This document shows positions 9,320 to 30,675 of a stretch of DNA of 64,000 nt, piece by piece. A program made the position numbers and the translations under genes. Source of the DNA: Fimbriosthenelais zetlandica (taxonomy: Eukaryota); contig OZ365115.1 of NCBI GenBank assembly GCA_977030845.1, forward strand, positions 6,324,001 through 6,388,000, given 5' to 3'. Below the pieces are notes generated by a model. The model saw only the letters and a program-made list of their open reading frames with translations. It did no database searches and was not told the DNA's origin. Position 1 is the first letter of the stretch. Every line of letters starts with the position of its first letter.

Positions 9320-9890
9320 GTGTGCTGAGGGTGAGGAGAGAGGGTGGGGAAGAGGGAGGGAGGGGTTGAGGGGTCAGAAAGGGCATATCAGGTGTGGTGA
9401 GAGAGAAATCTGGGAGAGGTGAAGGGAGAAGGGAGATCCAGAGAGAAGACAGGGAAAGATATAGGTGTATGTATCTGAATGGAGAGGAAAAGAGGTTCAA
9501 AAGATCCAAAATAGACAGGTGGACAGATTGGGTGTATGGAGGGTAAGTGATGAATGGATGATCATAGGACGGGACGTGTCTGATAATAGGGTTAGATGTA
9601 AACAGATAGACTCACTGACATCCAGACAGACAGAAAGGCTGGGAATGATGACTTTCTGGTGCTGGAGGGTTTTCTAACATTGAACCCTAACCCTCTCTAC
9701 CTCTCTTCATCTCTACCTCTTCATCCCTCTCCCGATCTCCCTCTCTCTCCTCGCCCTCGCCCTCCTTCTCTTTCTCCTTCCCTGTCACTCCCTCTCTCCC
9801 TCCCTTTCTACCTCTCACTCTCTCCATCCCTATCTCCCTCCCTGTACCTCTATCTCCCCCTCTTCCCCCTCTCTCCATCCATGCCTGACA
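9320..9890. repeat. low-complexity purine-rich then pyrimidine-rich tracts
   Basis: GA-rich at about 9320-9490 and CT-rich at about 9690-9880; accounts for the spurious ORFs here. Confidence 0.85.
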
Positions 9891-10480: not shown

Positions 10481-11361
10481 TTGTTCCATTAAGGAGATCT
10501 TATTGGAGTGATATATTTGAGTTGAAGTTTCTTTAGGATCTACTCAGTAGGGATCCAAGCCAAAGCTGGGATACACAAGTGTGTCAGAGGTGTGTATAGG
10601 CCACCTCGTCACACATAAAGGAATCACTTGGTCTTGCTAGAAAAACAAACCTACATTCAGACGATGTCCATTGTTATTCTCGACCCACACCCCACTCTCT
10701 ACTCCCTGAACAACCATTTCACAGGGTTTTCTCCATCTTGAAATAGCCCTGCCCGATCTAATGTTTGTGTGTGGGGTACAGAGCTGAGGATTTTGAACTT
10801 GGATGGGATTACTGTGATAGATCTGTTCACTTGTTACAGAATCAATACAGACTTTCTTTGAACCAACGCCATCTGTTTCTTATAAGTGTTTTAAGGACTT
10901 TTACTGATCTACGAATTTACAAAGTACATACCTGACATTCAAAGTGGAAATGTTTATTTGATCTGAGAGGAAGCGACGGTGAATGACGCGGATGTGAAAT
11001 CACCCCAAAGAAATAGTGAAGCCAAAGAAATAGTGAAGAGCTTGAAACACCAAGGAATGAGTTGGAACCTTCAGTAAACAACAAGCAAAAGTGAAATCAT
11101 TGAGGAAAATAACATGACGATTGAAGTTCTTGATTCAATGAATTGAAACCTAAGGCTTAAGTCAGGATAACTTAAAGTGGTCAATTGTGATTTCCATTTT
11201 TTATTGGGATATATCAATTGAGAAATCTTACTTCAGTTGATGACCTCTCATATCCCGTATGCTACTGGGAAAGTCATCAGTTTAGGATCTGGATTTATGA
11301 ATCGTGAATAGAGTGACTATTTTAGGGATTATCGTGATATCATCCTATATAAGCATTGTCC

Positions 11362-11430
11362 ATGGCTCTATGTGGGTGTGTGCCCGGGCGGAGTCGGCGG
11401 GCAGCCCGGGAGAAAACAGAGCACGACCCG
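11362..11430 (+). CDS. candidate alternative first coding exon of liprin-beta MALCGCVPGRSRRAAREKTEHDP
   Basis: ATG at 11362, CpG-rich, 69 nt, strong CCG|gtatgt donor; phase 0 matches the 13074 acceptor. Confidence 0.6.
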
Positions 11431-13073
11431 GTATGTCAACCTGCCTCAATGTGGGGGTCCATAACTAATATAATCTGTCCTTTTGTTTGTTTAGTTGCTC
11501 AGCTACGTCTGTCCTCCCATCATCTGTCCCTAAACTGTGCATATATTATAGAGTTAAAATGATGGTTTGTCAACTTTTATACGTTGCCAATCATTGAGGC
11601 CATTTTGATGGTTTGTGTAACAGCTTTCAAAATTTAACTTGCATGGGTTTAAAAAAAATGATTTAATTCAAAGAAAAATGTATTCTTGATCTCTAAAGTA
11701 AAGATCCTATATCTATTATTTAGACTATATGACATGGATTGCTGAAACGGTATTTCCCTTGCACAAAGTTGTTTAATGATTTTATTAAGTTTTCTATTAA
11801 GATTCTCTTGCCTAAGCTCTGCTATATATAGACGATCTATTTCTTGTATATTACAAAGGCTGACCCTAAACTTTGACCCAGTTCTGTCCTATATTAGGGC
11901 AGTATGTCACACCAGCTAGTCCGCCATAACCAAAGACTATACACATAGTACTCAGAGATTGTGTCAACAGTTGATATAGTAAAGAGGTGACAAAGTTCCC
12001 AGGTATATTGTACATATCTCCTAGAACTAAATCATTGATTTTACTGGAGATAATTGGATTCACTGACTGTTTAAACAGAGTTTGGAGTAAGTACAGCAAA
12101 CAGTATCTCATTGACTTGGCTGTTGGCATCAGATAGTAGTCACAGTGTTGGAGATTCATCTACTGTTTATATGTAACTAGTGGGATATTTTCCTCATGGA
12201 CCCCTTCTTCATTCACTCATACAATATTGACTAAAATCAATTGCTGATGACAATCCTGTGCTTTGAGGCGGTGTCACCAAATGGATTGCAGCAGTAGATA
12301 GTAGTCTATTCTAGATTGACATCATCTCTTTAACAGTTTTATATTTCGTGACTGATTGTCAATTTATTGCCCAACAAGTTTTGTCCTTAAATCTGTCACA
12401 GTTCACATACTAATTCCATTTATGACTTTCATGATGTCATAAAGTTTGAACCAAATGTTGCAGTTTTAATGTTTTAACCACCATATCTGTAACAATTTGA
12501 ATTTGGCAATAATCTCCATTATGAATAGGCATTATACATGTCATGTATGTATACATGACATGAAATCATCTATCATATAATGTTTTTCCCTGTCTAGCAT
12601 TCATGACTCTATATTGAATTGACCTCTATATGGTGGGTTGTTGATAGGATCATTTCTGTATAATGTGATACACATGTATATATGGGGAATTCTCTCACTG
12701 GGGGCACTGGTTCACGTTCCTGCAGGGAGACAGCTGTCTGTGGCACCCCTTTGTACTCTTGTTAGGTTTACCCTTAGTTAATTGCACGATACATCGAGTA
12801 TACATTGTATACATCTGTAACACTTGGTTTAACAACTTCAAGGCTGTGGTCCCCATGAGAATATCCCAATTTCAATCTAATACGTAACACAAATTTATCA
12901 TGGCATAAATCTTTTGACATTGGAAGAACAATGCCTGAAATTATAGTATTCATTAGAATATGAAAAATTCTGTATTTTAACCAAAAAAATATATATTATT
13001 CTTGTAAATAATTTACATAACTTTATTTCAGTGATTTGTTATATTAATGTGGCATTATTTTGACTATTTTCAG

Positions 13074-13205
13074 GAGCTGATAAGTCGCACGACTCTCGAG
13101 ACCCACAAGCTGGACCTGATGGCAGAGATATCCAACCTCAAACTTAAACTGGCCACCTCCGAGAAAGACAGGCGGGAAGCGGCAGAACGCCTCGCTCATG
13201 CTCAG
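13074..13205 (+). CDS. PPFIBP1: liprin-beta exon (coiled coil) ELISRTTLETHKLDLMAEISNLKLKLATSEKDRREAAERLAHAQ
   Basis: ttttcag| and |gtaaat; 132 nt, phase 0-0; close match to recalled vertebrate ELLSRTSLETQKLDLMAEISNLKLKL. Confidence 0.96.
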
Positions 13206-16200
13206 GTAAATTAAACCATGGAATTACTCAATTACTCATTCACAGACCCTGATATAAATTATACTCAGTCTGGGCCTTCTGAGATCAGAAGCCAGCTAAA
13301 ATAAAGGTCTAAAATTTCTCGAAATATTAAAATGTTAGCATTTCTCCACAGCCTGAAAAACCTTACTGCTTATCTAATCAATTGCCATTTGATTTGTTTT
13401 AGAAACGAATCGATGAACTACAAGCGAGACTTAACGAGAGGACGATAGAGGTGACTGACCTCCGGACGAGGATCACCAAAAATGGCACAACTTTACAAGG
13501 AAGCCACACAGAACCACCAGGTTGGACTCCATGAACAAACATTCATTATTACCATCTTAAACATAAACAGATAAGCTTCTTATCATTTAAATGCCTTTAT
13601 ATTTGTTCAGGCATACTGACAATTTGAACTAAGAGTAATTCCTTAGCTGTTTCTTGATTCGGGCAATGGTTTTTGCCATATCACATATGGTCTTAAGTTT
13701 TTGACGTTTTTATCTTTAAGTTAATTTCATTCGCTGGAGAATAAGTTGCCATTAAGTTTGATTCAGCCATCAGCCCACAACATTAGTTAATTCCCTTAAT
13801 GCCCACTTCACTTTGCTTTGACCATTTGTTCTACCTTTCAATCATTAGTTCCCTAAGTTTTCATAATTTTACTTCCTTTCACATTTGAAAACACTTTGAG
13901 TTGAGCTTTTCCTTTGTCAATGCAACAAATATACTAAATGTATTTTTTTTATGCCGATGGAAAGTTTTGTCTACCACTCCCCCTCACTCGTTTTCAATGA
14001 TTTAACTTGATGTGTGCACAGAGTGAGAATGTGCTGTATCATTTGACTGCATGTTTTGTGTTTTAATGACTTGGGTTTTCAGTGTTTGCTGGCTACGGTA
14101 AGACGTGGGCACACGGCAGTCACGGTGGATCTCAGGAAGCCTGGCGTCGCTGGTCATCTACCGGACTGGTCAGCCCTTCAGCTCATGAATTTACAAACAA
14201 TAATCAGGGTAATATTGACAGGCTTTGTTTTAGTCAAGACCTAAACCCTGACTTCTAATATTGAGTCTACCCTAGGGATACCAGGCGCACGTAGAGCTGC
14301 AGGGTTCACGGCCAGCTAACCAGCCTAACTCTGGCTCAAAGGCATGGCTCAAAACCCGGGTCCACAAACTCCAAATTATCTATAAAGAAATGTCATCAAA
14401 TTGTATCTTGTATCAACTATTTTCCCAATTTTCTCATCGGAGGACTTCCTCTTGGAGTTGCCTTCCTTTCACTTGTTTAGTTCAATTGCTAGGACAAAAT
14501 GAAGTTTCCTTTGGAAAAACTTAGGTTTTGAGCCATGTCTGTCGGTCAGTCCACACAGAAGTCCCAATCCATGTATGTGTCAAACTTGTGTCCTTTGCTG
14601 AGAGGTTTTTGGTTTTGGTTTTCAGTGAGAAAGCGTCACGTGTCGGAAAGTGACAAAAGCGGGGGTACGTGACTGGACGTGCATGCTAACATGTATAGAT
14701 GTGGTGCTTTCTAAAACACACACCTTGGGGCCCGCAGTCATCTTGAATCTATTTTTAAGGCTGAACAAAGAAATTGTGTTTTTCTGTTCTCAAAGATTAT
14801 AATTTCACTTTATTAATCTTCCAAAAAGGGTACAAATATTCCTATAATATATGTATCCTCGAAATACAACCCACATGAGTGGTTTTTCGCTATCCAAAAA
14901 ATGACCGAAAAACACAATTCCGAAGGTTTAGAAATTATTGGTTGATATATGGAGGGTTAATTTCAATATGGATCAGCAAAAGCTCAACAATGAAAAATCT
15001 TGGATCTTTTAATGATGTCTGAATCAGCGATGTGAATTTCCTGATCCATGTTGCAAAGTATCCCATGAATAGCGGCACTCTTAATGCATAGGTGCTATGC
15101 ATGTCACAGTTATATCATTTCATGACGTTAAATGTATATAAAATGCAGGTACGTTTTAGAAAAAAAAAATCTATTGAAGCGAGCAAATATTCCTGACTTT
15201 AGAACCTGCTGTTTTTCCTGTTTGATACTTTCTAAAAGTTTAGATGCTCGAATTAAATTTAAATATTTTTTCCTGTGCTTTTATTCATAGCCTTTGGTAT
15301 GATGAGTTACTGTAGTCAGATATTCTGGAGTGTAGTGGTTGTAGTAGTGGTAGTGGTTCTACCTTCTTTCCTTCCGTATTTTAAAAAAAAGATAAATTAT
15401 TTCAAAGAAAATCACTGAAAAGAATTTTTGTCTCGCATCAAGGTATGCATGGTCACGGCTCATTGTACAAATCAGTCGCATGAGCTATTTATAACAAGTC
15501 ACTTTTTTCTCCATATTCATTTGGCATGAAAAAATGTGGTGTCTATTTGTCTTTCAAAATTTAGTTACCCTGTCGTTTTCCCCGAATTTGTTATCTTTGA
15601 AGTGAAGAATTGTTGCAGAGATACAGCAAAAATCTGGTCTTCTTCGTAGATCTTTTAGTAGATATACACATGTATTGTTCTTTAAATTTAAAATCTGTTA
15701 TAAAGGTATTAGTATTCAAATCCATCCAGGAGATTTGCTGGTATCTCTTCAAGTCTTCACCTTTCTTTCCCTCCTTTCTTTACTCATTTCCAGTGGTTTC
15801 TTTCATTTCAACCAGATGCAGTAACTCGAACTTTGGAAAGAGAGAAAACGTTGGACCGGCTAAAGAGAAAACGTAAGCTGTCCCCCATAGCACTGTCTGA
15901 GGGACTAGATCTTGATTCCACTTGTCCACCACGCCCTCTCTTGTTTCTCCTCATTGATATTTCTATGTGTCTTTATAATGTGTCTCTTTGTCTCCTTGTA
16001 CTGTGTTTTCAATCTTTGTGTCAGACGCTCAATGCATCATGAAGCTCATCTTCACTAACACTACAGCAGAATTCTCCCATTCAGCCACATGCAGACTGCC
16101 AGCCGAAAAGAATGTTTTTAATTTTAAGATTTTCGGGAATTGTTCAATGTTCAGAGCTATGTAAAGTTATGTTTGAAAATAGATTAATTTTTGGAACAAA

Positions 16201-19200
16201 ATTTAATATTGTTGGTTGTGGTCTGGAGATTCCATTTAGCAGTCTGTATTGGGTATGGGAACTCTTTCAATTAAGGTGTTGTCACAAGCATCAGAGATAC
16301 TGTAGATTCACAAAAGCAGTATCTTTATGGTTGTGGTACTCGGGGAGGTTTATATATTACTAACCAAATACATTTCAACTCCTCAGCACAAAATATAAAC
16401 TTAGTTCCAGCCTGTCATGTTTAATACTTAACATTAAGCTACTTTTTAACAGGAATGGGATGATTGTTTGTGCCGTTTAAGTACAGACAGAACTAACTTC
16501 TAACTTGCCATGTTGCTCGCTGCATTCTAGGTGACTAAGGAGACTTTTTGCATCCCATGGCATTTTAACATTAATTAATCTCTTATGTGGTGAAGGTTTT
16601 TATTTTCAACTTGCTCCAGCGTGTGACTTTTTAAGTGCATCTCTTGAAACTTTTTAAGGTTGAAGCACCTGTTGATAATCTTCCTTTCAGATAGGTTACT
16701 TCACATACACCAAAGAGGAGGGCCAAGATTCCATTACAAATTCATTAAATTCTAATCATATTTTATTCTTTAAAAACAAAATTTTATCAACTGACATACT
16801 TGCAAATACACTTTTATTTCATAACATTACCCGAGCATAAAATGTGCATTCCGTTTTAATATTTATTAAGTTCAAGTCCTTAAAAGGCATTTTAATTTTT
16901 GTCCAGTTTTACCCCCCACCCTCTTAATAATTCTATCCCCTTTCCATTTTTTGCCCTGATTTTTGTTTTTCTTTGCTTCGTAACTTCTTAAATCTTTTTA
17001 ATTTTGATATTAAACCCAAGGAATGGGAATTAAAACTAACATAATATATTTATTTCCTATCATCCACATGCTGCATTAAAACATGAAATTTTAACGTACA
17101 TCGTGGTTAGTACAACATATTTTCAGGACAAGTAATTGTTTGTTTTGTCAACCTTTTCTCCGTTTTGTGTGTCAGAACTTAATTTCCTGAAGAAAGCGAA
17201 AAAGAACGATATGAAAGTCATATATGAAATTTCTTAAACCCAACATTCTATTACATGCTTTTGTAGATTTCAATTTATGTATATGTATAAGACAAACAAA
17301 TTGCAATACAATGAATCCTATCAAATTAGTGCATGGATTTTTCATTCCTACATTTCATTTGTGTGGATTGAGTGATGAATGAATTTGTCATTTTGAGTAG
17401 ATGGAGGTCCCTGCATGCATATCTACCCTTTGTTGAATATCTTATTTTTCTAAAATAAAGAGACCTAAAAAGATTATTAAAGACATAACATATCACCTCT
17501 TAACCTGGTAATATCCTCTTTTTATTTGGGATTTCTTAAAGTAAAGAGTTTTCTGTACTAAAACTTTTAGAGAAAAATTGTCTATCGGAGTAACTTTCGT
17601 TCTCAGAAAATTAAGTTTCCCATATTTTATTTCCAGATTCTGAAGTTGAAAAACTGAAAAAGGCAGTTGAAGCCTTGATGCAAACGAATAGTGAAAAGGT
17701 ATGTTACAAACCTCGAACCATTCATTAGTTATAATATGCTAACTTAAGCCTGGTTCCAAGTCATTCGGAAAGTCTTAAGATTACACTGAACTGTTCTTTC
17801 TTTTCTAGGATCATCATATTGAAGAACAAAGGAAAATGATCAAGAAATATCAGAAAATAGAAGAACTCTTATTAGCAACACATGGGAGAAAAGGTCTAGA
17901 ACAACTTGGTCTTCCTGACGATGCTGGCAGCGACTCCAGTTCTACTCACAACTCTTCCTCCTCCAATGAAAACAATGTAAGACCTTTAAAAATATTTAAA
18001 TCACGCATATAGATTTTGATATTAGTTTTAACTTCATGCTATTTTCTACATTAGTATATTTTTCCTTTTGATAATTTGACATAAGCAGGTGAACTGTATT
18101 TCTTGGTATTCAGTGTGCTTCTTTCTTCTGTTCGTTAGGGCCACCATGATGCTTTTGATATGGTGGATCGCAAGATGCCAGTACCTTCTGCTACCAGTAC
18201 CCCAGGAAAAGGTACATTTATCCCGGGTATATACAACCTCTAACACATATTTCGATTTTTTTGCATTAACTCACTTGCATGGCTATTTTAGTTAGTAAAG
18301 TTACCTTTCTTCTAAGCTTCAATGTAGTTTCTATTTTCCTGACTGGATTAAATGTATAGTAGACATATAAAGTCTAGAATAAGGTTTTCTCTTCTTTCAG
18401 ACGTATTTAAATACCATGGTACGAACGGTATTCATCATCCAGAGACGCTCACTCCGCCATCCAGAATCATGAACATACACACTCCATCTCCCAGGAAAGT
18501 AACCGGTGGACTCGTCCGCTCCAACAGTGCAGAGGACCTCTCCCCACTTCCATCTAAGGTCAGTATCAGGGCATCATTGTCTTGTAGGGTATCATCAGAG
18601 ACACTATATTAGACTGATATAAAGTGTCTGGTATCTCTCTGACTGTGTAATGACTGTAATAAGACAAAAAATGTATCTTATGATCAAGAGTCAAACCTGG
18701 ATCTCTGTACCCCCACTAATGCCAGTGCTGATGGAGTTGAACTAAATGGTACTGATCTTTTGGGAAACTGGAGGAATTGTATTAATTTTAACAGCTGGAT
18801 AAACATTATCAGGGGGTGTGAATTGTGTCTAAACACAATTGTTATAGCAGAGCCGTGCGACCCACAATGTGGGGTGGGACGCCAATATCTTATACCGTAC
18901 TAGAACTAATAATTTCTCTTCTCACTTGTTTTTTTTTATTCTTGCAGACTCCTCCCACCTCTCGCCGTCATGGAACTGGCTATGGTACGTTACCCGCTAC
19001 CCTGTCATCTCCTGGTATGGACGGCAGTCCCGGGGCGGTACCCCGCTCTGCCTCCACCTCCGTCATTACCTCACGACCCCCGACTGGAGCTAAATCTCGT
19101 AAACCACCCCCACACCAGTCCAGCCCCTCCCGGGCTCGCTCCAACACCACCACTACCACCAGCAAGCACCAAGCAAGCCCTAGTCCCGTCAAGAACCGGG

Positions 19201-22200
19201 GATTCCCGTCTTTTGGTAAAGGGTTGTTTAAGTTGCGCACTGGAAAATGGAGCTCGTCTGCGCCGAACTTAGGTGACAAAGACCCGCCTTTGTTTCAGCC
19301 TGCGGTTGGCTCTCGTCTAGGTTAGATTTCTGTCTCTATCCCCACCCCCTCTGTCTGTCTCTCTTGTCTTCTGTCTCTCTCCTTCCTGTCTGTATTTTAT
19401 GTGCCTGGAATAATCTTTAAGTCAGAAAATTATTGAATTCTTTTTATTGGAAATTTTACTGAGAACCCCCCAAATTTTCTACAAAATATATTAGTTTCTA
19501 CACATCTGGAATTATCTCTATACATTTCAAAGAAGTTTTAAATTTAAAGGAACTTTAATTGGTGCATGAACACTGTTTTTTCTGGACAGTTACCTTTCTT
19601 TTGGGCTCAGTAATGGAAATGTTCCTATTTTGAACATGGTAATTTTCCCTATTGGAGTCGAAAAATTGTTTAAATTTTATAGGCAGATTTCTTTATTTTG
19701 ATAATAGATGAACCTTGTTAAGAAGGCCAGGCCGTCTGTCTCTCTGTTCTGTCTCTTGTTCCTCCCACTGACCATCTCCCTCCCTGTGGGGGAGAGAGTC
19801 GGTCTGTGTGTGTGTGGTTCTAACTGATCATTCTCTCCCCAGTCATCGTGTCTAACTCATCTACATTTACACTGACCATAACACTACCAGTCATCAGCAT
19901 GTTATACCATCACTTAACATGGTTACTTAACCTCTTAACGCACCATCTCAACTCACTATTTAATCTTATATGTCCTCATTATAATAACATCAGTCGGAAA
20001 CCAAGCTATTACAATGAGGATTTGGGGGAATCATTTTGTGTAGTCCAAGCAATAGAAAAATCGGATTGGACAATATTTTCCAAATTTTTCAAAGAATCTT
20101 TTAGTTCCTCGGACAAAATTTGTAATTCATATTTAATAAAGTAGATTGAGATGCTGTGTTAAACAAACGCCAGAAACAAACATCATTGATTAACAAACTC
20201 ACAATCTTTTCACTTTCAACTCACATCAACCTAGAGAAGTTAAGACAAGCAGCAAGTATTCTTGGATAAGGCATGTTTTAAGGATATTATTTAAAGAAAG
20301 AGTGAAGTTTGAATCCTTGGACGAGTTATTGTAAGAATCGGTGGTGATTCTTTACAATACAGAGCTTATAATGCACGGCATGATGTGTGATATAATAATG
20401 CCTTGATTTGTTAGTAATCAAGAAAAGAATGAAAAAGGATATGTTTAAAAATTGCGACATTTAAACTGGGGATTTTTTTTATTAAATATATTTTATTTAA
20501 GGAATTCTGTTTTATCAACATCAGGGGTAAATAATTATGGTCATATTCTCATATTTTTGATAAATTGTTGATTTCTTTATTTTTACCTAACATACAAGAG
20601 AAAAACGAACATCCTAGTAGAAGCTGGGAGTCATTTTAATTGCCTTTTTTTTAATATAAAAACTTCGGTGTGGCTAGATATTTAAGGCTGGCAAGATTGT
20701 CAGATAGGCTGGCAGGCCAACATCTGAATCGAGGTGGAAATTTAATTCAATTCTATTAATTGAACTCAACGTTAAGTCCATATTGTGTCAGCTATTTTCT
20801 TTATTGAGTTTAAGCCAAATCTGATGATTCCTTGATGACAGATTTTATGGTAAAATAAGTACATCTTACTTGAAATGGATTTAGGATTCAAGCAAGGTAA
20901 GGTTAATGTTTCAGGACATTTGCCGAGGACACTATTTACACTACCTACTTCACATCATTGTGCCTCTTTGAGAACAAATCAGTCGTTAACATTATACAAT
21001 TCATCATCATAATATCAATCCATATTCCCCCAGAACAAAATAATCACTTTCTTCTCCCTGTCTCTGTTTATTCATACAAAGGCTTTGGTTCTCTCACACC
21101 ATGATTTTCTCCATCAAGCTTCTTTGGTTTACATTTTCCTGCTTTCACACTTTTAATTGTGTTGCTGTCCAACCATTTACTCACCATTTTGGTTTTCCAT
21201 TGTGCTGTACATTTCATAACATTATGGTGTCTGGGTTTAACCATTCTCAGTTGTCTCCTATTCTATTGTATGTGTCTTTCATCCATCTCTCACAGGGGCA
21301 ATCCACCATCCTTTTTTATGGCATTTTTAGAGAAAATGTTTGTTATAGGTCTTTTCCTCAAATATATCAATTCTTAAGGCTTTAACATCTACGAACTTTC
21401 TGGTCGTGTTGAGTTTTCGAAATGGAAAGGTAACTTAGCCATGATATCTAAATCTTCTCAAAATTGTTGCATATCGTTCTCTAACATCAGAATCAAGCTA
21501 AATTTCTTGATGTATTCATTGGTCTAAGTGGATTGCCCCTTTGGTTGTCTGATCAGTTGAAGAGGGTCACCCGTTCTGTCGTATGAGGAGTTCCATTCAA
21601 ATACCAGTGGGTAAGGAAGGTCTGCGAAGTGACGGATTTTCGCCCTAAAGATAAAGGCTGAGGATCGATCTATGACTTGCTTGGTACTTAGTCTGGAAAA
21701 ATAATCTTGCCACATAGTATACTTTATCCTAGCTTGAAAGGTCTCAAGCCTTTAAAAATTCATTCAGTATCTTAAAGTTGAAGTTAAGTGCTTCACTAAA
21801 GGACTAGGAAATTTTGGCTTTCCTTCCTTTAGTCTTATAGCTACCTTTATTAATTTTGTCCCTATTTCTAATTCTTAAAATAAAGCTTATCAAAGAGGAT
21901 GGTATTCTGACGATGAAGGAGGTAAAAATATTTTGAAATGTCAAAATGTGATTCTTTATTTTTAGAACAGTTCTTATGTACATATCCTTTTCTTTTTTTA
22001 GAATTTTAGTATTGATTTTATTCAGGGTGGATTTTCATTTTTGACCATCACTGATATTTATTATACTGTTTTAGGTTTAGAGTAGTTCTTAAAGTATCCC
22101 TTCGGGACGAAAATGATAAAAACATGTGAAATTATTGGGTGGTTTTTAAATATGCTCAGTTTAAATTGAACATTAATTAAACTAGAGAAGCATGATAGAG

Positions 22201-25200
22201 CATGGTACAAGAGCATGAAGTTGAAGTTAGATTTTAGAAGAGTTAGATGATAATATTCTGCCATTTATTATAATGTGTGAACCATCTACCATTGAAATTG
22301 ACTATTGCGAATTCTTTAAGATATGTAACAATTCCACAACTGTTTAATAAGAGTGCACCATTTACTAAAGCAGGTTTGACTTAACTTTATAACTGTGTGT
22401 ATATATCCACCACTGTTGTCCGTACACTCTGGGTGTAATTATTTTTCTTACAATGAAGTTCAAATTTTGACTTAATCAGGGCAGGGGAATGTTAAGAGGT
22501 TCACAATTTGACTTATCGACTCATGGTTTACTTTTCCCTTATATAGCACAAAACACCGATTCGGAGGAAACCCTAAAGGACGAAATGGCCCAGCAATATA
22601 AGATGATGCAATCCCAGTCAAGAGATGTTCAGGGGGGTCCAGTTGCCTGGGACCAGAAAAAAAAGCAAAAAGGAATCAAGAAGTTCTTTGGGAAGTAAGT
22701 GAGAGCAGCTACTCGTACATGAACCCCCGGGAAAGTGATCATGTAGTGATGGTTTTACTCGACTAAGTGATCCATTGGCTGCACAGATTGTCACACTCAA
22801 ACCTCGTTTGGTTTTTGAAATATGATTTTTACTATAATTTCTGAAGTTTATTATAATATTAAGACATCCTCCTCACGTTGTTTAATGTCTTAGAGAATGG
22901 AATTCGTATAATATCTATTTATTTACTGCATTGCTTGCTGCCCATTGCCTACTTATGCTAGGGAATGAGTGAAGAATATTACTTTCTAAAGCCATCTATA
23001 CCAACATTTCAACTTCAGATAAGTTAAATATTGTTTCTCGAAATGACTACTTTCTTCTATTACTTTCTATTAGAGCTAAACAGGTAAAATCAGTGCTCAA
23101 GGCGCATATGTATCGATTTAAAATTTAGAAATAGTATCTGTAGGCAGTGCGCTGTTGGCATCAAACATTTTCTTGTATCTGGATGTATCTTTTATTACTT
23201 GTAATGTTAGGATATTATAGAATTAATATTGAACTTTATACCTCGTAGAAAATTGTGATAATCTTCATCCAGTCTGTATTATCTAATATTTTAAACTCCT
23301 TTAATTTCACTCAATATTCCCCTTCGTTAATTGTCGAATACTTTATTACTTATTTGTTGTCTTGTCATTTTACAAATGGTGGTCAATTCTTCATGTTGTT
23401 TTGTGGTTGTCACCCTCCTTGCCTTAGTAATGTTGTGTATACATTTTGCTCCCCTCCTCCACCCCCACCATCCCTTTTGTCCATTAATGTTAATTCCCCC
23501 GACCCCTAACGAAGCAAGCGTCCTGCTTTGTGATGCCCTTGCTTATTGTGACCTTGCTTCTTGTGACCTTGGGTGCACTTTAACCTTTAAAGGTTACGCC
23601 GTAGCAGCTCACAGGATATGGACGGTGAATTGGAGGACTTCCGACGGAACGGAATGCGTGCCACGGCAGGACCTCGACTAGGATGGTCGAAAGACTTGAA
23701 GTATAAGTAAGCAGTTCCGAAAACCTGCTCTCAACCTGGGGACCTCCTTCCTCTCACTTTTGAGACTTTTCTTTTCATTTCCATGACATAGATCTATACA
23801 TGTTTATTAATCAACTTTGTAAGACCCTGCTCCTACTTTCATTGCATAGACCACATCAGTTATTGTTCTCTACCATGTATATTAGTGATGTGTATTTTGG
23901 AGCCAGCATGGTGCATATATACCACTTTTTGAACACCTATAGGAGAGGCACCCCAATTTGCATCCATTCAAACAATCTTACCTTTGAACCTTGTAGTGTA
24001 GTCATTGATTTTTGATATACTCCTTGTATATTGATTTCAATATAAGTTCCCATAATCAACCAGAAAATATGGTTACTTGAGTGACTAGCAATTCAGGCAA
24101 GTGCCAATTTTTAAGCTATTTTTTAAAGATCCTTTCACCACACAACCAGATGCTCTGTAAATCCCTTAGAGTGCTGCGTAATGAACAATAGAACTTTAAG
24201 AACAATGAAGAACTGTTTTACATATATATGTTTTTGTGGTATTAGTCTATAAACGTCATTAATTTCCTTTCAGTGATTTAGACGTACCGTTTGCCCGATG
24301 GGACAGCGACCGAGTCGCGGCTTGGTTGCACTCCATGGGCTTGAGTATGTATGTTGGTGAATGTAAACGATGGGTCAAAAATGGCGACCATTTATTAAAG
24401 GCTTCACCTCATGATGTTGAAAAGGTAAAGTCATAGCTTTAGTCCAAAAACCCTTTACAAATGTCAGAGATCTTAGGAAAGCCAGGATTTTTCATGCCGT
24501 CTTCAATCCATTCAAATAAATTGCATTATTAAACTTTTCTATTTCTAAAGGAACTAGGAATGAGGAATTCCTTACATAGAAAGAAGCTACAACTCGCACT
24601 ACAGTCAGTGGGCTCCTCTGAATCACAGAGCCGAATCGATGACTTGGATCACAACTGGGTGTTACGTAAGTTCAGATTAAATACATGCATATTGATATTT
24701 TAATTCAATTTGGAAATAAATGTTAAGGACATGTATGTAGTCATCTGGATCTATATGGAGTTGGGTTTTATTAGTTGTTATTTTTGCCCGATATAGGATG
24801 GCTGGATGATATAGGTCTGCCACAATACAAGGACCACTTCAACGAAGCCAAGGTTGATGGTCGCTTGCTTCACTATCTCACTGTGGTAAGGATTCTATCA
24901 TGTACATTATAATGAATAGTAAATCAAATTCCCATCTCTTTTTTGGCCATTGGACATGATTGTACCGGATAGTTGAACTCTTTACCAACCAGATATATTT
25001 TGTTTGTAGGAGGATCTACTGTACCTGAAGGTGACCAATGCTCTCCACCATCTCAGTATAAAGAGAAGTATCCAGGTGCTCCGAAAAAACAACTGGAATC
25101 CAGGCTGTTTGAGACGGCGACCTACTCCAGGAGACACTGTGGTATGTCATCCCATTCATTCTTCCCTTCTCAATTGGCATTAACCAACCTCCACTTTTCT

Positions 25201-28200
25201 AATGAACCTTAGGGAGAGATCAATTATTTTCTTAATTTCTAAAATTAATGGGGTATGATTTGATGTGTTTGTAGCAACAGGGACCTCTGCGAGATGCAGC
25301 CAATGAAGTGATGTTATGGACTAATCACAGAGTCATGGAGTGGCTACGTACCATCGATCTTTCTGAATATGCTCCCAACCTTAGAGGCAGTGGTGTTCAT
25401 GGATCTCTTATGGTAGGAATTTATTTGCCAAAAATTACAAGTATTTTCAGCTTTGAATAGTCCTGATGTTCTCCATGATTGTAGCAGTTCGATACAATTG
25501 TCTGAATCTATGAATTGTTGTTCAGTATGTTCCTATCTCTTTCCTTAGGTCCTCGAACCCCGTTTCACAGCTGAACTTTTTGCATCTCTACTCTCTATTC
25601 CCAATAATAAAACGCTACTCCGTCGACATCTGAGTACGCACTTCGTTGCCTTGATCGGCAACGAGATGCAGCACAGAAAGCGAGAAGTTGAGGCCCAACC
25701 GGGCAACATCCCTCTCACACCCAACCAAAAGCTGAAGGTAAGAACACGCTCCTACTATGAAGTTGGACTATGCACTTAATCTGTCTCAATCATTTGTCCC
25801 ATTGATTTTTCTGAAAAACAGATTAAATTGTTTCTCTCATGAAAAATGTTCTTCAGAAAATGTACTGTCTTTTAGTATTCATCTATTTTGGTCTACTAAC
25901 TTTAATTGTCAGAACAAACTTTTGTGAAAACTGTCAGTCATTTTCAGTTTAATGACTTTAAACAAAGGGGATTTAAATCTACTTTCAACAGTTATTCTTC
26001 TTAAAGAGCACCTGTTTAAAAATTGGTTTCCTCTAAAGCATGCAGATGCGTATTGTGTAAGGGACTTTAAACATGAAATACATTAATAGACATAGCAAGA
26101 CATTGTCTGTGACCACAAAAATATATATCCATTCAGAACTTAGTACATTTCTAGATGTTGATGATTTGTGGTAGATGGCTATTGTACTTCTTCTACATGA
26201 TGTATATTATATTTCGTACGCCCCATGTATACATATGGCTTGCTTAGTGTTGCACTTTTAAGGTTTAAAAGACCATACATCTGGGTAAAGTACATAACAA
26301 TTCTAGAATACAGAGTGATTAAGTAAATGTTTGGGATATAAAGGCACAATTTTTGCTCGGGCGAATGACACTTAAATATATGATAACAGTTTAATACTTT
26401 CTAATGAAAATTCTTTCAAACAGAGAGCACCATCTGTGGTAATTAAGAATTACAATTCATACATATATATAGGCATACAATCACTGTATAACCCTTACAT
26501 TAAGACCAGTGTGTCTTGGTTGTTAGCTCTAAGCCTGTGAATAAAATTCTAACCACCCTGATGAAAGACACCCCCGATCACTGCATTTATAAGGTCACAA
26601 ACTTTCACCATAGCACAAACATCACTCCTTTAGCCCTGCCATTTAGCGCCAACAAGTTCACTTCTAATCAATTTAGATAAATTTCCCGTGCTAGTGTCAT
26701 GTCAAGTTGACTAGTTTTACTTATAAATTTGGTGGAGAACCATAAATCTTGCAAAGTCAGTTCCGTTCGGTCACCTTAGTAAAGTGCTTCTATGTCTGTT
26801 AAACATTGACTTTGCTCTTTTGGGTATCCTTAGGAAACACAATATGGTACCAGAAAATATGCTGCACTGCTAAGCTTTAAGTTCACAGTTCTTTTCTGTT
26901 TCAGTCCCACTCAAGAGTCAACCAGAAATTTTTCAAGAATTCCTTTCCTGGCCATTTTTTCTGATTGTATATACCATTTTTTTCTTCGGTACAATGAGGC
27001 ATTATGGTGTTACTTTTAGGTGTTCACCAATATCCCAGTGCAGATCCCATCACAGGTGGCTCAGATAGTCGTGCCTGTCCAAAAGGTGGGGGCTGGTCAA
27101 CACCACCATTGTGTTTGTGGCCGCCCTGGCTGGTTGATTGCTCCTCCTGAATGCTGTTTGCCCAGTCCCGATAAGTCATGACAAACACTAATTCCATGGG
27201 CAAAAGCTTTGTTTCTTTTTGAAAATGAAAAATTGGCTTCACCCTTCCTCACCATCATGCTGGACCAATTTCTTTTCAATGATCCAATTTGTTCATATAT
27301 AAATACAGGTATATCCACTGCACTTCACAATCATAAAAGCACACTATAGAAATAAATCTATTGGTGATCTTGTAATGATTGGTGATAGAATTGATCAGAA
27401 GATTAAATATATATATACAAACGTCAATATTTTTTATCTTAAAATAGTAAAAAAAAAAAACAATTTATAAGAATTAACCTTGTTGCAATTCATGACACAG
27501 GAACTATGACAAATAATATGAAAGTACCAAAAATGCAGACCATGATAATGCAAACATGTTCCAAGAAAAGTACTACAGAAGGTTTCCAAACATTTTCCCC
27601 CTTAGCATTACCAATAACAAATACATTGTGGTTTGTTATTATAATATTTTAACCCTTGTGTTGTGTTAGGATGATAGACTGGTTTGTTCTTCATCCTACA
27701 TTTCTGTCCATGGTTGATTAACCCAGTTGTTTATCCTTCAGGATTCCATTTGTCAAGTTGTAAGAATGCATGTATTATGGGTTTAAGCTCTAATATAGCT
27801 ATTAAGCCCATAGTAAGAGGTTTTCACATCTAAAAATAAACAGCTTTGTTAAAAAATATATTATTTTAAATCGGGTTATGAATAGTGATACATCAATTTC
27901 TGAATCCAATTTGATCCCATCTTATTCATTTAGAAAGACCTTAATATTAAATAGGAATTAAAATACTTAAATGGTCATCTTAGAATTTTGAAGAACCATG
28001 TGCTCGTAACTTTCTGTTTGCTAAGGGTTTTTTATTGATTGATTTTTAGTTGAAGAAGTTTGGACTGTTTGGCCACCGAAGAACCCGTTCAGACCCAGAT
28101 CTGGATGATTTTGTTTGTCCTATGGGATCTGACACGACAACCAACGGTTGGGCAGCTGGCGACAAGGTTAAAGATGAAAAGGCAGCCAAGGAGATTGGAG

Positions 28201-28448: not shown

Positions 28449-30675
28449 GAGGAGGGTCAGTCGACAGTTGTATAAATACCATCTCATCCAGAATACTGTA
28501 AACATCACTTCAACATGTCTCCACCCTCCATCCACCATCACCACCCCTCACCACCTCTCATCTCCACCTCCTCCAGATGACATTTCCCCCCGTGAAATGA
28601 GTCCTTGGTGGCCATACGCGTTCAGACTTCTCACCAACTTCACTTCCAGATCAAGCTGCTTCCTCCCCAGAAAGTAGATCCTGGCTGACCTTCACTGATG
28701 AAGGCCAAACGTCAAGAGTTCACTTACAACTTTGATGTGCCAAAACTTTCTTAACTATATTTTTCTTGCCATCAACTGTACCCTACCCAAATGTATTGCC
28801 ATTCTTATTTAGCATATTATTGATGTGCTAAATGCAATGTTTTGAGTTAATACATCGTCGTTATTGAGGTACAATAACCAGCGGTCCGTGCGCTGGTCCT
28901 CTTTGCTCCGTCTTAGGACATAAGTCTTTTACCTCTGGTCTTGGAAATCCCTGTGGATCAGGTTCTTTTTATAATAGACAGAGAGAGAAAACTTAAATGT
29001 TCATAGAAAAAAATCGTCTCAGACATAAATCTTTCTCTGAGGTTGTGGCGGTTCTTTCGTTAAAGCTTCTTGAAACAAAATGATGGCCTGCATGCCCTTA
29101 AATTATTTCCTCGGAATTTTTCCGCCTTAAAGGCTCCTCCGTTAAAAATGGTTTGGCAGTATTTATGAACTTTGTGCTGGTAGATTTACCTCAGGGATAT
29201 AAAAGCGATTAAGACACATTAAGAATAGGGAATCAGATTTGGATATTGCATGTTCGTCATACATTTTTCATACATTTATTATAAAATGAAGGAATTATTG
29301 CATTTCTTGTCAGGTTTTTATACAATAAGAATTTGAATAGTTATCCTCTTAGAACTGAATCTGCTGACGAGTTTCCAATATTTGAATTTGAAAAAATATT
29401 GTATAGTATAGTCTCTTGCTACTCTTTCTTAGGAAGATTTTGCTACATTCAGTTTTGAAATAACTATCTTTATAAAGGTGAAGCGAGGTTACCATGCGTC
29501 TGTCTACAATAATAATGAAGTCAAGTTTCATATTGTGTTTCATGTTCATTAGGGAGGATAATATAAACTTATCCTTTGATGATTGTCCTATATTTGGACT
29601 TAAATAATTATTATCAAAGTTGAGTTAAAACCTCGGGCTATATCATGGTAGCCATTGATCTTTCGCTCTTCTGCTAAGCTGCTCCGTTTGATTCATCCGT
29701 TAGCAGAGTCTTATTTTATTTGCATTTCTTGGGGGTTTCGACAAAAGTTGTTCACTTTTGTATCTCTTTTTTTCCTAGGTATATTTGTAATGAAAACAAA
29801 AGTGTGTGGACGTTTTTTGTACAAAGTAGAGGTTTGAAAGACAGTATGTAGTTTGTATAATGTGTGCCTCTGAGGAACTTGTGACTGGTGCTATTTTCAT
29901 GGGAATAGATGCTATTATAAGCGTCTATATAGATGGGTGCAAGTCATAGTACATACGGTTTATATAGACAAGACTGATAGACATAACATAGCATATCAAA
30001 CATGTAGCCTATAACTACCGGCATTTAAAAAATATCAGAAGCAATAAATTAGCATTTTCCAAAGAATTTTTACTCCAAGCGAGAATTTATTAATGCTTTG
30101 AAATTAAAAGTGTTAGCGGTACCTTGTAGAAAGCAATAACTTATATGAGCCTAATTAACATGGATTGTAGGTCTAGGCCTACATGCATTCACATCATATG
30201 TCATATTTGCTTTTAACATTTTTACTAATAGGCCTATAGACCTCGAGCCTGCATACCATTTACCACAGTATTCTGTATGTAAAGAATATCTTAATTACTA
30301 CCATACCTGTTCATTGCTTATTCACTATATATCTTTTCAAGTTTCTGGATTGCATATATGTACAAAAAAATCATATTATTTAACGGTGTTGGAAAAAATG
30401 AATTTATTTTGTTATGGGAGTCACCAAAAAAAAGTTTCCACATTTATAATATGCATGTATAGGATGTTGCTGAATGTTTCTTGTATGAACTGTACATTGA
30501 TTATGTTTCATTCTCGCTCACTGTGTCAGCACATTGCTGGCATATTGAAAACAACTGTCTGGTACCTAAAAAGAGGGAAATTCATGAAGGTAGTCAGGCA
30601 CTTTGACTTAACTTATGTTACTATACATAGTCTCCAGTAAGGACCTTACAACAGATGCCTTTTTCATCTTTGATG

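What the first reader, a model, noticed from the sequence alone, without database searches (positions are those of the whole stretch)
11362..11436. Internal first exon giving liprin-beta a Cys-x-Cys/polybasic N-terminus (possible palmitoylated short isoform)
Seen: ATG-GCT-CTA-TGT-GGG-TGT... encodes MALCGCVPGRSRRAAREKTEHDP and ends in CCG|gtatgt, in phase with the ELISR exon 1.6 kb downstream. Established: N-terminal cysteines next to basic residues are the S-palmitoylation signature of proteins such as GAP43 and SCG10. Inference: an N-terminally truncated, membrane-anchored liprin-beta made from an internal promoter. I know of no such described isoform.
Basis: partly seen in the sequence, partly recalled or inferred. 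Interest (0 to 1): 0.7.

Follow-up and report, generated by a model that had tools for sequence, protein, structure and literature searches.

The report
Conserved annelid liprin-beta Cys-Gly-Cys start exon
A 69-base stretch inside a huge intron of a worm's liprin-beta gene is a real, conserved alternative start exon; it gives a shortened scaffold protein a Cys-Gly-Cys plus basic tip that most likely carries fatty-acid anchors to hold it on membranes.

Summary
ATG 11362 to CCG 11430 encodes MALCGCVPGRSRRAAREKTEHDP. A GTATGT donor follows, in phase 0 with the liprin-beta exon at 13074-13205.

On its own this is at chance level: 39 similar ATG-ORF-plus-donor candidates lie in the same ~41.5-kb gap. 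Conservation is what makes it real. The gene tree places the window among annelids. The same exon (M-x-[L/F]-C-G-C-[V/I], then a basic cluster) lies 1.8-3.1 kb upstream of the equivalent exon in Capitella, Lamellibrachia and Ridgeia. In each case it has its own ATG, an in-frame stop 4-10 codons upstream and a phase-0 donor. In a metatranscriptome contig from a fourth annelid it is spliced directly onto that exon.

The short isoform loses the KANK-binding N-terminus and the first coiled-coil piece. It keeps the dimerising coiled coil and the three SAM domains.

S-palmitoylation is inferred, not shown. Annotated isoforms from other phyla carry other membrane-motif-like tips on the same exon: MGQGGSK in abalone, MDMCCFK in octopus, and a polybasic tip in Lingula.

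No RNA run for this species was listed, so splicing, promoter and start site here are untested. I found no paper describing a lipidated liprin-beta. The scan noted this stretch once more (s1-223659), not on other DNA.

The parts
11350..11352 (+). In-frame TAA stop four codons upstream of the start codon
   Evidence: Equivalent in-frame stops lie 4-10 codons upstream in L002, Capitella, Lamellibrachia and Ridgeia. The ATG is therefore a true start, not a continuation of upstream coding sequence.
11362..11430 (+). Coding part of the alternative first coding exon: MALCGCVPGRSRRAAREKTEHDP (23 codons, phase 0 at its end)
   Evidence: Conserved as M-x-[LF]-C-G-C-[VI] plus a basic cluster in four other annelid sources. 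G+C is 68% against 35% in the flanks. Single copy in the genome.
11431..11436 (+). Splice donor GTATGT
   Evidence: The orthologous donors are GTGAGT (Capitella) and GTAAGT (Lamellibrachia, Ridgeia), all phase 0.
11431..13073 (+). Intron of 1643 nt between the alternative exon and the shared coiled-coil exon
   Evidence: The orthologous introns are about 3.1 kb (Capitella), 1.8 kb (Lamellibrachia) and 1.9 kb (Ridgeia).
13074..13205 (+). Shared liprin-beta coiled-coil exon (ELISRTTLETHKLDLMAEISNLKLKLATSEKDRREAAERLAHAQ), acceptor ag at 13072-13073, phase 0
   Evidence: This is the first conserved liprin-beta exon inside the window. In many species alternative N-termini are joined to it.
13403..28244 (+). 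Remaining liprin-beta exons (rest of the coiled coil, Ser/Pro-rich linker, three SAM domains, C-terminus). Boundaries are approximate, taken from tblastn.
   Evidence: HSPs at 13403-13504, 17639-17698, 17809-17928, 18445-18558, 19191-19283, 23591-23704, 24269-24667, 24799-24885, 25010-25126, 25239-25415, 25549-25821, 28053-28244.
10860..11361 (+). Presumed 5' leader and/or promoter of the short isoform; its 5' boundary is unknown. A candidate acceptor ttttag| lies at 11320-11325 and a TATA-like tatataag at 11346-11353.
   Evidence: Inference only. The L002 transcript has a leader of at least 505 nt before its ATG. The 600 nt upstream of the exon are more alike between Lamellibrachia and Ridgeia (0.6-0.73) than the intron downstream (0.35-0.6). 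The acceptor-like repeat is D8.

Best explanation
This is the coding part of a conserved, annelid-wide alternative first coding exon of the liprin-beta (PPFIBP-type) gene. It lies in the roughly 41.5-kb gap between the first coiled-coil exon and the ELISR exon.

Transcripts that begin at or upstream of this exon splice 11430 to 13074. They are translated from ATG 11362 into a short liprin-beta. The short form lacks the canonical N-terminus (the ASDMLAAALEQMDG motif, which in mammals is the KANK1-binding piece) and the first coiled-coil segment. It keeps the dimerising coiled coil and the SAM1-3 module that binds liprin-alpha.

The new tip is Met-small-hydrophobic-Cys-Gly-Cys-Val/Ile followed by a cluster of Arg/Lys. 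It most likely works as a membrane anchor. The hydrophobic and basic residues would give weak, transient membrane affinity. DHHC acyltransferases would then S-acylate Cys4 and Cys6, fixing the scaffold to the membrane independently of KANK.

Shown: the exon, its phase, its start codon, its conservation, and its splicing in one relative.

Inferred: use in this species, an internal promoter, S-acylation, and membrane targeting.

My odds are about 0.9 that it is a real translated alternative N-terminus, and about 0.65 that the cysteines are S-acylated.
For: 1. Sequence: ATG, 23 codons, GTATGT donor, phase 0 with 13074, and TAA four codons upstream.

2. Spliced transcript in a relative. JGI metatranscriptome contig L002 is the closest relative found with readable DNA (68% identity over 532 columns). 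It reads MMSFCGCVPMKAKKVPSNS joined directly to ELLNRNTLETHKLD. It has an in-frame stop upstream and about 505 nt of stop-rich leader without liprin coding sequence. The public gene call (P0168) started at the internal Met and missed this N-terminus.

3. Genomic orthologues, each with an upstream in-frame stop:
- Capitella L020 8319-8369: MNLCGCIGKSRKVPKNR|gtgagt
- Lamellibrachia L021 28999-29052: MSLCGCVSARRKYLLKGD|gtaagt
- Ridgeia L023 619-672: MSLCGCVSAKRKYLVNND|gtaagt

4. M1, C4, G5 and C6 are invariant (alignment A2). The Gly and Val codons differ synonymously between window and L002, while the tail varies in length and sequence. That pattern fits selection on the peptide tip.

5. Statistics: score 45 versus 27 for the next best of 589 candidates; 0 of 200,000 shuffles reach it. 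The peptides find each other as the best cross-species hits in each annelid locus.

6. Between the two siboglinids the exon is 74% identical, against 45% for the next 100 nt of intron.

7. What the isoform loses and keeps, using mammalian liprin-beta1 P0215 as ruler:
- PDB 8iw0, a liprin-beta1/KANK1 fusion, covers residues 1-25.
- PDB 3qh9, a liprin-beta2 chain whose match falls in the coiled-coil region, covers 180-260, downstream of the ELLSR exon that starts at residue 158.
- PDB 3tad (SAM domains) covers 625-885.
- The window's canonical exon 1 with the ASDMLAAALEQMDG motif lies 53.6 kb upstream of the window start.

8. Precedent for the mechanism. PSD-95 (MDCLCIVTTKKYR), CaV-beta2a (MQCCGLVHRRRVRV), Grip1b and S-delphilin are scaffolds S-acylated at N-termini, some of them isoform-specific. 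S-acylated cysteines often sit next to polybasic stretches (PMC4035745).

9. Parallel cases on the same exon in annotated isoforms of other phyla:
- Octopus: MDMCCFKPSDFKFKH|
- Haliotis: MGQGGSKQ|
- Gigantopelta: MGNTNTKE| (like Haliotis, this fits the N-myristoylation consensus)
- Lingula: MFRSFRRKKKQKAEK|
- Biomphalaria: MHCVK|
Against: - No RNA or DNA sequencing run of this species was listed. There are therefore no junction reads, no start-site data and no expression level for the window itself.
- Only one spliced transcript exists, from an unidentified annelid in a metatranscriptome assembly.
- The start codon context is weak (T at -3).
- The 5' end of the exon is undefined. A plausible acceptor at 11324-11325 means it could be a second exon.
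- No lipidation assay or predictor was available. A Cys-Gly-Cys could instead serve another role.
- No CGC exon was found in Lottia's 35-kb orthologous intron, nor in nine metagenome contigs with 0.7-10 kb of upstream flank. It is not universal.
- Several other species' short N-termini on this exon have no lipid-like motif. The cross-phylum pattern is suggestive, not a rule.
Confidence: 0.62

Rival explanations
1. The exon is a real, translated alternative N-terminus, but the Cys-Gly-Cys/basic tip is not S-acylated. It might bind acidic lipids through the basic cluster alone, bind a metal or a partner protein, act as a redox-sensitive switch, or act as a nuclear-localisation-like signal.
For: - All the conservation evidence fits any function of the peptide tip.
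- Lingula's isoform on the same exon is purely polybasic, with no cysteine.
- No lipidation test could be run.
Against: - The invariant residues are the two cysteines and the glycine between them, not the basic residues, which vary in number and position.
- The hydrophobic residues flanking the cysteines are kept, as in PSD-95 and CaV-beta2a (PMC4035745).
- Octopus (Cys-Cys) and vetigastropods (myristoylation consensus) have other lipid-type tips on this exon.
Confidence: 0.2
2. The exon is conserved but mainly regulatory. It could be a non-productive or poison 5' exon, or a leader whose short ORF controls translation, with the peptide itself having no function.
For: - If spliced in from the candidate acceptor at 11324-11325, the exon would be 105 nt and would place TAA 11350-11352 in frame in the canonical mRNA.
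- The L002 leader is long and rich in upstream ATGs.
Against: - Conservation is at the amino-acid level, with synonymous codon changes and a variable tail.
- All five copies keep the ATG, an open frame and a phase-0 donor that continues straight into the liprin-beta frame.
- L002 contains no canonical upstream coding exon.
Confidence: 0.06
3. A chance ORF with a chance donor in a long AT-rich intron; it has no function.
For: 39 comparable ATG-ORF-plus-donor candidates exist in the same 41.5-kb gap, 11 of them with strong donors. No expression data exist for this species.
Against: - The same motif occurs at the same place in four other annelid sources, with ATG, upstream stop and phase-0 donor.
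- 0 of 200,000 shuffles reach the observed similarity, and it is a clear outlier among 589 candidates.
- Exon G+C is 68% in a 35% background.
Confidence: 0.03
4. A conserved RNA structure or DNA regulatory element (for example an intronic enhancer or GC-rich hairpin) that only happens to be open in one frame.
For: The exon is GC- and CpG-rich and holds two CCCGGG sites 15 nt apart.
Against: - Folding energies are no better than shuffles in any of four species (z from -1.3 to +0.5), and no structure is shared.
- Nucleotide similarity between window and L002 is confined to the Cys-Gly-Cys-Val-Pro codons, with third-position changes.
- L002 shows the sequence in a mature spliced RNA.
Confidence: 0.02

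Closest known systems
PSD-95 alpha versus beta (and SAP97 alpha/beta) N-terminal isoforms; PSD-95 N-terminus MDCLCIVTTKKYR
   Same: Both are scaffold proteins whose alternative 5' exons decide between a protein-interaction N-terminus and a short tip. The tip has two cysteines separated by one residue, flanked by hydrophobic residues and followed by basic ones. In PSD-95 the cysteines are S-acylated and target the scaffold to membrane (PMC4035745 Table 2; the alpha/beta isoform logic is from my own knowledge).
   Different: The protein family is different (MAGUK versus liprin-beta). In the annelid motif the cysteines are at positions 4 and 6 with glycine between them. Acylation here is untested.
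CaV-beta2a (CACNB2 N-terminal splice variant, MQCCGLVHRRRVRV) and GAP-43 (MLCCMRRTKQ)
   Same: Each has an N-terminal cysteine pair next to hydrophobic and polybasic residues, with no glycine at position 2 for myristate. For CaV-beta2a, only one N-terminal variant of the gene carries it (PMC4035745).
   Different: Those cysteines are adjacent (CC). The annelid motif is C-G-C. The octopus liprin-beta isoform MDMCCFK is the closer match to this type.
SH4 domains of Src-family kinases (Lck MGCGCSS)
   Same: Both contain the same Cys-Gly-Cys core close to the N-terminus (own knowledge).
   Different: SH4 acylation depends on prior N-myristoylation of Gly2. All five annelid sequences have Ala, Ser or Asn at position 2, so this route is not available.
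Annotated short liprin-beta isoforms of molluscs, brachiopods and nemerteans (RefSeq models)
   Same: Alternative first exons are spliced to exactly the same phase-0 coiled-coil exon. One type is conserved across molluscs (..RPASTGxYxSLWExKxxELM|). Others are short tips: MGQGGSKQ| in Haliotis, MGNTNTKE| in Gigantopelta, MDMCCFKPSDFKFKH| in Octopus, MFRSFRRKKKQKAEK| in Lingula.
   Different: None carries the annelid M-x-[LF]-C-G-C-[VI] tip. Lottia's orthologous intron has the mollusc-type exon but no CGC exon. The database names say nothing about lipidation.
Canonical liprin-beta1/2 (PPFIBP1/2) of vertebrates
   Same: It is the same gene family, with a coiled coil plus three SAM domains. The window's exons match throughout, and the gene groups with annelid liprin-beta.
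   Different: The canonical protein is recruited through its N-terminus to KANK1 (PMC4995097; PDB 8iw0). The short annelid isoform lacks that part. I found no paper describing a lipidated liprin-beta.

Membership tests
Liprin-beta (PPFIBP) gene | N-terminal liprin-beta-type coiled coil followed by three SAM domains, with orthology to named liprin-beta proteins | tested here: met
   tblastn of named liprin-beta proteins finds window exons from 13074 to 28244 in order. The relatives carry PF26022 CC_Liprin_beta, SAM_1 and SAM_2. The tree places the window in a supported (98/93) annelid liprin-beta clade.
Alternative first coding exon (internal start of a shorter isoform) | Own start codon that cannot be reached in frame from upstream coding exons | tested here: met
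   TAA lies four codons upstream of the ATG in the window. In-frame stops lie 4-10 codons upstream in all four relatives.
Alternative first coding exon (internal start of a shorter isoform) | Spliced transcripts joining the exon to the downstream shared exon and lacking the canonical upstream exons | tested here: inconclusive
   Met in one relative: in L002 the tip is joined directly to ELLNR, with about 505 nt of non-liprin leader. It could not be tested in the window's own species because no sequencing run was listed.
Alternative first coding exon (internal start of a shorter isoform) | A transcription start site or promoter inside the intron | not testable with these tools
   No CAGE or 5'-end data are available. 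The only hint is that the upstream flank is more conserved than the downstream intron between two siboglinids. The TATA-like motif at 11346-11353 is too close to the ATG.
N-terminally S-acylated (palmitoylated) soluble scaffolds of the PSD-95 / CaV-beta2a / GAP-43 type | Cysteine(s) within about the first ten residues, with no transmembrane segment | tested here: met
   Cys4 and Cys6 are invariant in five sequences. The tip has no hydrophobic stretch long enough for a signal peptide or membrane span.
N-terminally S-acylated (palmitoylated) soluble scaffolds of the PSD-95 / CaV-beta2a / GAP-43 type | Hydrophobic and/or polybasic residues flanking the cysteines, giving initial membrane affinity | tested here: met
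   Leu or Phe at position 3, Val or Ile at position 7, and 3-5 Arg/Lys within the next ten residues in all five. The rule is taken from PMC4035745.
N-terminally S-acylated (palmitoylated) soluble scaffolds of the PSD-95 / CaV-beta2a / GAP-43 type | Demonstrated thioester-linked fatty acid and cysteine-dependent membrane localisation | not testable with these tools
   This needs acyl-biotin or acyl-PEG exchange, metabolic labelling and cysteine mutants.
SH4-type dual acylation (myristoyl-Gly2 plus palmitoyl-Cys, as in Lck MGCGC) | Glycine at position 2 as the N-myristoylation site | tested here: not met
   Position 2 is Ala (window), Ser (L002 from its second ATG, Lamellibrachia, Ridgeia) or Asn (Capitella).

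The most novel reading that the evidence does not exclude
The long intron before the ELISR exon may be an old 'anchor-swap' site in lophotrochozoan liprin-beta. Under this reading, each lineage keeps a tiny first exon there that replaces the KANK-binding N-terminus with a direct membrane anchor of a different chemistry:
- dual S-acyl Cys-Gly-Cys in annelids;
- Cys-Cys in octopus;
- myristoyl-Gly in vetigastropods;
- a polybasic patch in Lingula.

The annelid and octopus exons (M-x-hydrophobic-C-x-x-x-P) might descend from one ancestral exon. This would reveal a lipid-anchored, KANK-independent mode of liprin-beta function that has not been described.
Probability: 0.3. Interest if true: 0.75.

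Novelty: new variant of a known kind. Interest (0 to 1): 0.6.

Why it matters
Liprin-beta is a core scaffold of cortical microtubule-stabilising complexes and of synaptic liprin-alpha assemblies. Its known route to the cell cortex is protein-protein binding, through KANK1 at the N-terminus and liprin-alpha through the SAM domains.

A conserved isoform that drops the KANK-binding end and gains a probable lipid anchor would be a second, direct way of placing the liprin-alpha-binding module on a membrane. It is easy to test with a 23-residue tag. It would follow the same logic that distinguishes PSD-95 alpha from beta.

The finding also corrects public annotation:
- the N-terminus is missed in the JGI gene call;
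- the Capitella gene is split into two models on either side of this exon;
- the exon is unannotated in the Lamellibrachia and Ridgeia models I could read.

Similar tips in annotated octopus, abalone and Lingula isoforms suggest the theme may be wider than annelids.

Tried and rejected
**Searches and fetches that gave nothing**
- Sequencing runs.
- Protein database searches for other CGCVP N-termini. The full-length L002 ORF restricted to residues 1-63, and the 63-residue spliced peptide, found only P0168, one mollusc isoform and a genomic ORF, P0225. Lengths of 110-424 aa were not covered.
- Metagenome scans. The first found nothing. The second gave nine contigs with the ELISR exon, none with a CGC exon in 0.7-10 kb of upstream flank. 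Most are not annelid-like.
- P0225 is the closest relative (its ELISR exon is 86% identical). It lies on a 294-kb ENA contig whose DNA could not be served. A 48-aa ORF is called 1.0-1.15 kb upstream of its ELISR exon but cannot be read.
- Loci for Owenia, Lingula, Tubulanus and Dimorphilus were not on record. The exon's age within and beyond annelids is therefore open.

**Ideas rejected**
- TATA box idea. The tatataag at 11346-11353 is 16 nt from the ATG, which would put the start site inside the coding sequence. It is not conserved in the other annelids.
- RNA hairpin idea (two CCCGGG sites). Folding is no better than shuffles and no structure is shared.
- Repeat or transposon origin. The stretch is single copy.
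- A mollusc-type alternative exon in this species. The candidate about 15.4 kb upstream of the window start (MYDMPNSTPSTPSPIALWDPERVFTLL|GTAAGT) has no counterpart in Capitella or Lamellibrachia and is probably chance.
- The internal CGCRIPGMRSDR stretch in scallop liprin-beta (P0013, P0110) resembles the tip. It lies far upstream of the ELLTR exon and has no Met, so I treat it as unexplained, not as an orthologue.

- The local Pfam copy lacks PF26022, so the coiled-coil domain limits come from precomputed hits and PDB matches.
Full report
**1. The observation**

The sequence is as described. ATG sits at 11362. Twenty-three codons encode MALCGCVPGRSRRAAREKTEHDP and end at 11430, followed by gtatgt. 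The next conserved exon begins at 13074 after ag and reads ELISRTTLETHKLDLMAEISNLKLKLATSEKDRREAAERLAHAQ up to 13205. Both junctions are phase 0 and the intron is 1643 nt. An in-frame TAA lies four codons before the ATG.

**2. Is it more than chance?**

Taken alone, no. I located the canonical upstream exons in the genome (window = G000:C25:6324001-6388000). In window coordinates, where negative numbers lie upstream of the window start:
- exon 1 (MSRNPATEASDMLAAALEQMDG...) is at about -53,650;
- the first coiled-coil exon (LETDRESLMLQVSVLTDQVEAQGDKIRDLE) is at -28,621 to -28,454.

The candidate therefore lies in a gap of about 41.5 kb before the ELISR exon. That gap holds 39 ATG ORFs of at least 10 codons ending in a phase-0 GTRNGN, 11 of them with strong donors.

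What singles this one out within the window:
- its composition: 68% G+C and 7 CpG against 35% in the flanks, reached by 0.2% of 69-nt windows;
- it is single copy in the genome.

**3. What gene and what organism**

The window exons from 13074 to about 28244 match liprin-beta proteins throughout: coiled coil, linker, three SAM domains. In a maximum-likelihood tree the window falls in a supported clade (98/93) with Capitella, Lamellibrachia/Ridgeia, Dimorphilus and several unnamed transcripts. It is therefore an annelid gene. Its nearest relative with readable DNA is a JGI metatranscriptome contig, L002 (68% identity over 532 columns).

**4. The key evidence: conservation and a spliced transcript**

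The public gene call on L002 (P0168) starts MKAKKVPSNS|ELLNR. Reading the contig shows that the frame opens nine codons earlier:
- it reads MMSFCGCVPMKAKKVPSNS joined directly to ELLNRNTLETHKLD;
- an in-frame stop lies shortly upstream;
- the leader is about 505 nt, stop-rich, and contains no liprin coding sequence.

From its second Met this aligns with the window as MSFCGCVPMKAKK / MALCGCVPGRSRR. Among 589 ATG..GT phase-0 candidates in the 41.5-kb gap, the window exon scores 45 against L002's tip. The next best scores 27, and none of 200,000 shuffles reaches 45.

I then fetched three annelid genomic loci. Each has the exon at the expected place:

| Source | Position | Peptide and donor | Distance to the ELISR-equivalent exon |
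|---|---|---|---|
| Capitella teleta (L020) | 8319-8369 | MNLCGCIGKSRKVPKNR, then gtgagt | 3.1 kb before DLSSR..THKLD |
| Lamellibrachia satsuma (L021) | 28999-29052 | MSLCGCVSARRKYLLKGD, then gtaagt | 1.8 kb before ELKNPS |
| Ridgeia piscesae (L023) | 619-672 | MSLCGCVSAKRKYLVNND, then gtaagt | 1.9 kb |

All three have an in-frame stop 4-10 codons upstream and a phase-0 donor.

Further points on conservation:
- In the four-sequence alignment M1, C4, G5 and C6 are invariant (alignment A2), and Ridgeia keeps the same residues. Position 3 is Leu or Phe and position 7 is Val or Ile. Three to five basic residues follow. The tail varies in length and sequence.
- The Gly and Val codons differ synonymously between window and L002.
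- Each peptide finds the others as the best cross-species hit in each annelid locus.
- Between the two siboglinids the exon is 74% identical, against 45% for the intron just after it. The 600 nt before it are also better conserved (0.6-0.73) than the intron, which fits a leader or promoter.

This excludes a chance ORF. It also makes an RNA or DNA element unlikely, because folding is no better than shuffles and no structure is shared.

**5. What the isoform would be**

Mammalian liprin-beta1 (P0215) served as a ruler. Its ELLSR exon starts at residue 158. The PDB matches are:
- 8iw0, a liprin-beta1/KANK1 fusion, covering residues 1-25;
- 8iw5, covering 42-89;
- 3qh9, a liprin-beta2 chain whose match falls in the coiled-coil region, covering 180-260;
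- 3tad, the SAM domains in complex with liprin-alpha, covering 625-885.

KANK1 binding to liprin-beta1 is needed to cluster cortical microtubule-stabilising complexes (PMC4995097). The short form would therefore lose the KANK-binding end and the first coiled-coil segment. It would keep the dimerising coiled coil and the liprin-alpha-binding SAM module.

**6. How the tip most likely works**

It is too short and too polar to be a signal peptide. It has no Gly2, so it cannot be myristoylated; position 2 is Ala, Ser or Asn. It does match the N-terminal S-acylation sites of soluble scaffolds: cysteines within the first residues, flanked by hydrophobic residues and followed by a basic cluster. Examples are PSD-95 (MDCLCIVTTKKYR), CaV-beta2a (MQCCGLVHRRRVRV), Grip1b and S-delphilin. 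The same review notes that S-acylated cysteines often adjoin polybasic stretches (PMC4035745).

The conservation pattern fits that reading: cysteines and their hydrophobic neighbours are fixed, the basic residues are present but movable, and the linker is free.

I rate S-acylation at about 0.65. It is an inference.

**7. Wider context found on the way**

Alternative first exons spliced to this same phase-0 exon are common in annotated lophotrochozoan genes.
- Molluscs share a conserved ..RPASTGxYxSLWExKxxELM| type. It is present in Lottia's 35-kb intron, which has no CGC exon.
- Several very short tips look like membrane devices:
  - Octopus sinensis X16: MDMCCFKPSDFKFKH|
  - Haliotis (three species): MGQGGSKQ| or MGQGESKQ|
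  - Gigantopelta: MGNTNTKE| (like the Haliotis tips, it fits the N-myristoylation consensus G-x-x-x-[ST]-K, from my own knowledge of the PROSITE pattern)
  - Lingula X11: MFRSFRRKKKQKAEK|
  - Biomphalaria X6: MHCVK|
- Others do not: Pecten MPGLNYSQ|, Lineus MAQYSHMNK|, Pomacea, Liolophura.

The pattern is suggestive support for a membrane-anchored short liprin-beta, not proof.

**8. Known or new**

Full-text searches pairing liprin-beta with palmitoylation, myristoylation or N-terminal cysteines returned no paper describing a lipidated liprin-beta. The annelid tip is absent from the protein records I could reach:
- P0168 is called from an internal Met;
- Capitella's gene is split into two models on either side of the exon;
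- the Lamellibrachia and Ridgeia models omit it.

The mechanism is a known kind: an alternative 5' exon swaps a protein-binding N-terminus for an acylated tip, as in PSD-95 alpha/beta. Its use in liprin-beta appears new, so I class it as a new variant of a known kind.

**9. Limits**

- No sequencing run for this species was listed. Use of the junction here, the 5' end of the exon, and the promoter are all untested.
- The 5' end could be a first exon with a long leader. Alternatively it could be a second exon using the candidate acceptor at 11324-11325.
- The TATA-like motif 16 nt before the ATG cannot serve this start codon.
- Only one spliced transcript supports the splice, and it comes from an unnamed annelid.
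- The depth of conservation beyond Capitella, siboglinids, the window species and L002 could not be tested, because the Owenia, Dimorphilus, Lingula and Tubulanus loci were not retrievable.

**10. Verdict**

The exon and isoform are well supported; anchoring and the promoter are inferred.
- The finding is a real, conserved annelid liprin-beta start exon with a probable dual S-acylation tip.

Noticed in passing
L002:506-562 (JGI metatranscriptome contig Ga0373523_00287): The public gene call P0168 starts at an internal Met (MKAKK...). The open frame really begins nine codons earlier with MMSFCGCVP, so the Cys-Gly-Cys N-terminus is missing from the protein record.
   Followed up: yes
L020:1948-15663 (Capitella teleta KB293180.1): The Capitella liprin-beta gene is annotated as two separate models: a 240-aa N-terminal coiled-coil piece and the 785-aa rest. 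The unannotated CGC exon lies in the gap between them at 8319-8369.
   Followed up: partly
Proteins P0275, P0281, P0283 (Haliotis), P0325 (Gigantopelta), P0285 (Octopus sinensis), P0245 (Lingula), P0349 (Biomphalaria): Annotated short liprin-beta isoforms of other phyla carry tiny N-termini on the same exon that look like membrane motifs: MGQGGSKQ and MGNTNTKE (myristoylation consensus), MDMCCFKPSDFKFKH (Cys-Cys), MFRSFRRKKKQKAEK (polybasic) and MHCVK.
   Followed up: partly
Protein P0190 (Logan transcript, unnamed taxon): A canonical-type liprin-beta transcript opens with MNCSCRLRVFSQEKKKK, 21 residues ahead of the usual start (MTSVSSPVSDASDMLAAALEQ). This is another Cys-x-Cys plus polybasic tip, here placed on the long isoform. 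It could instead be a translated leader.
   Followed up: no
Proteins P0013 and P0110 (Argopecten, Pecten), residues about 120-145: Scallop liprin-beta models contain an internal stretch CGCRIPGMRSDR that resembles the annelid CGCVPGRSRR. It lies far upstream of the ELLTR exon and has no Met before it. It is unexplained and may be coincidence.
   Followed up: no
G000:C25, about 15.4 kb before the window start (window coordinates -15482 to -15402): An ATG ORF, MYDMPNSTPSTPSPIALWDPERVFTLL, ends in a phase-0 GTAAGT and loosely resembles the mollusc ..LWExKxxELM alternative N-terminus. It has no counterpart in the Capitella or Lamellibrachia loci, so it is probably chance.
   Followed up: yes
window 9327-9362 and 9677-9880: A GA-rich block and, about 350 nt later, a CT-rich block of degenerate 8-10-nt repeats form long imperfect inverted repeats. 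This makes the most GC-rich kilobase (48%) of the region upstream of the exon.
   Followed up: no
window 11005-11038: A perfect tandem duplication of a 17-mer (CCAAAGAAATAGTGAAG, two copies) lies about 330 nt upstream of the start codon.
   Followed up: no
window 11314-11328 versus 13061-13075: The sequence TGACTATTTTAGGGA, 37 nt before the ATG, mirrors the acceptor of the ELISR exon (TGACTATTTTCAGGA). It offers a possible acceptor at 11324-11325. An exon starting there would be 105 nt and would carry TAA 11350-11352 in frame.
   Followed up: partly
G000:C25, about 42.7 kb before the window start (window coordinates -42747 to -42706): A conserved small exon, YPYYYQTLPRRRKK, matches alternative N-terminal exons of scallop, octopus, abalone, oyster, Lingula and Lamellibrachia liprin-beta (..Y[YF]QTLPRR..). 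This is another alternative 5' module of the gene.
   Followed up: no
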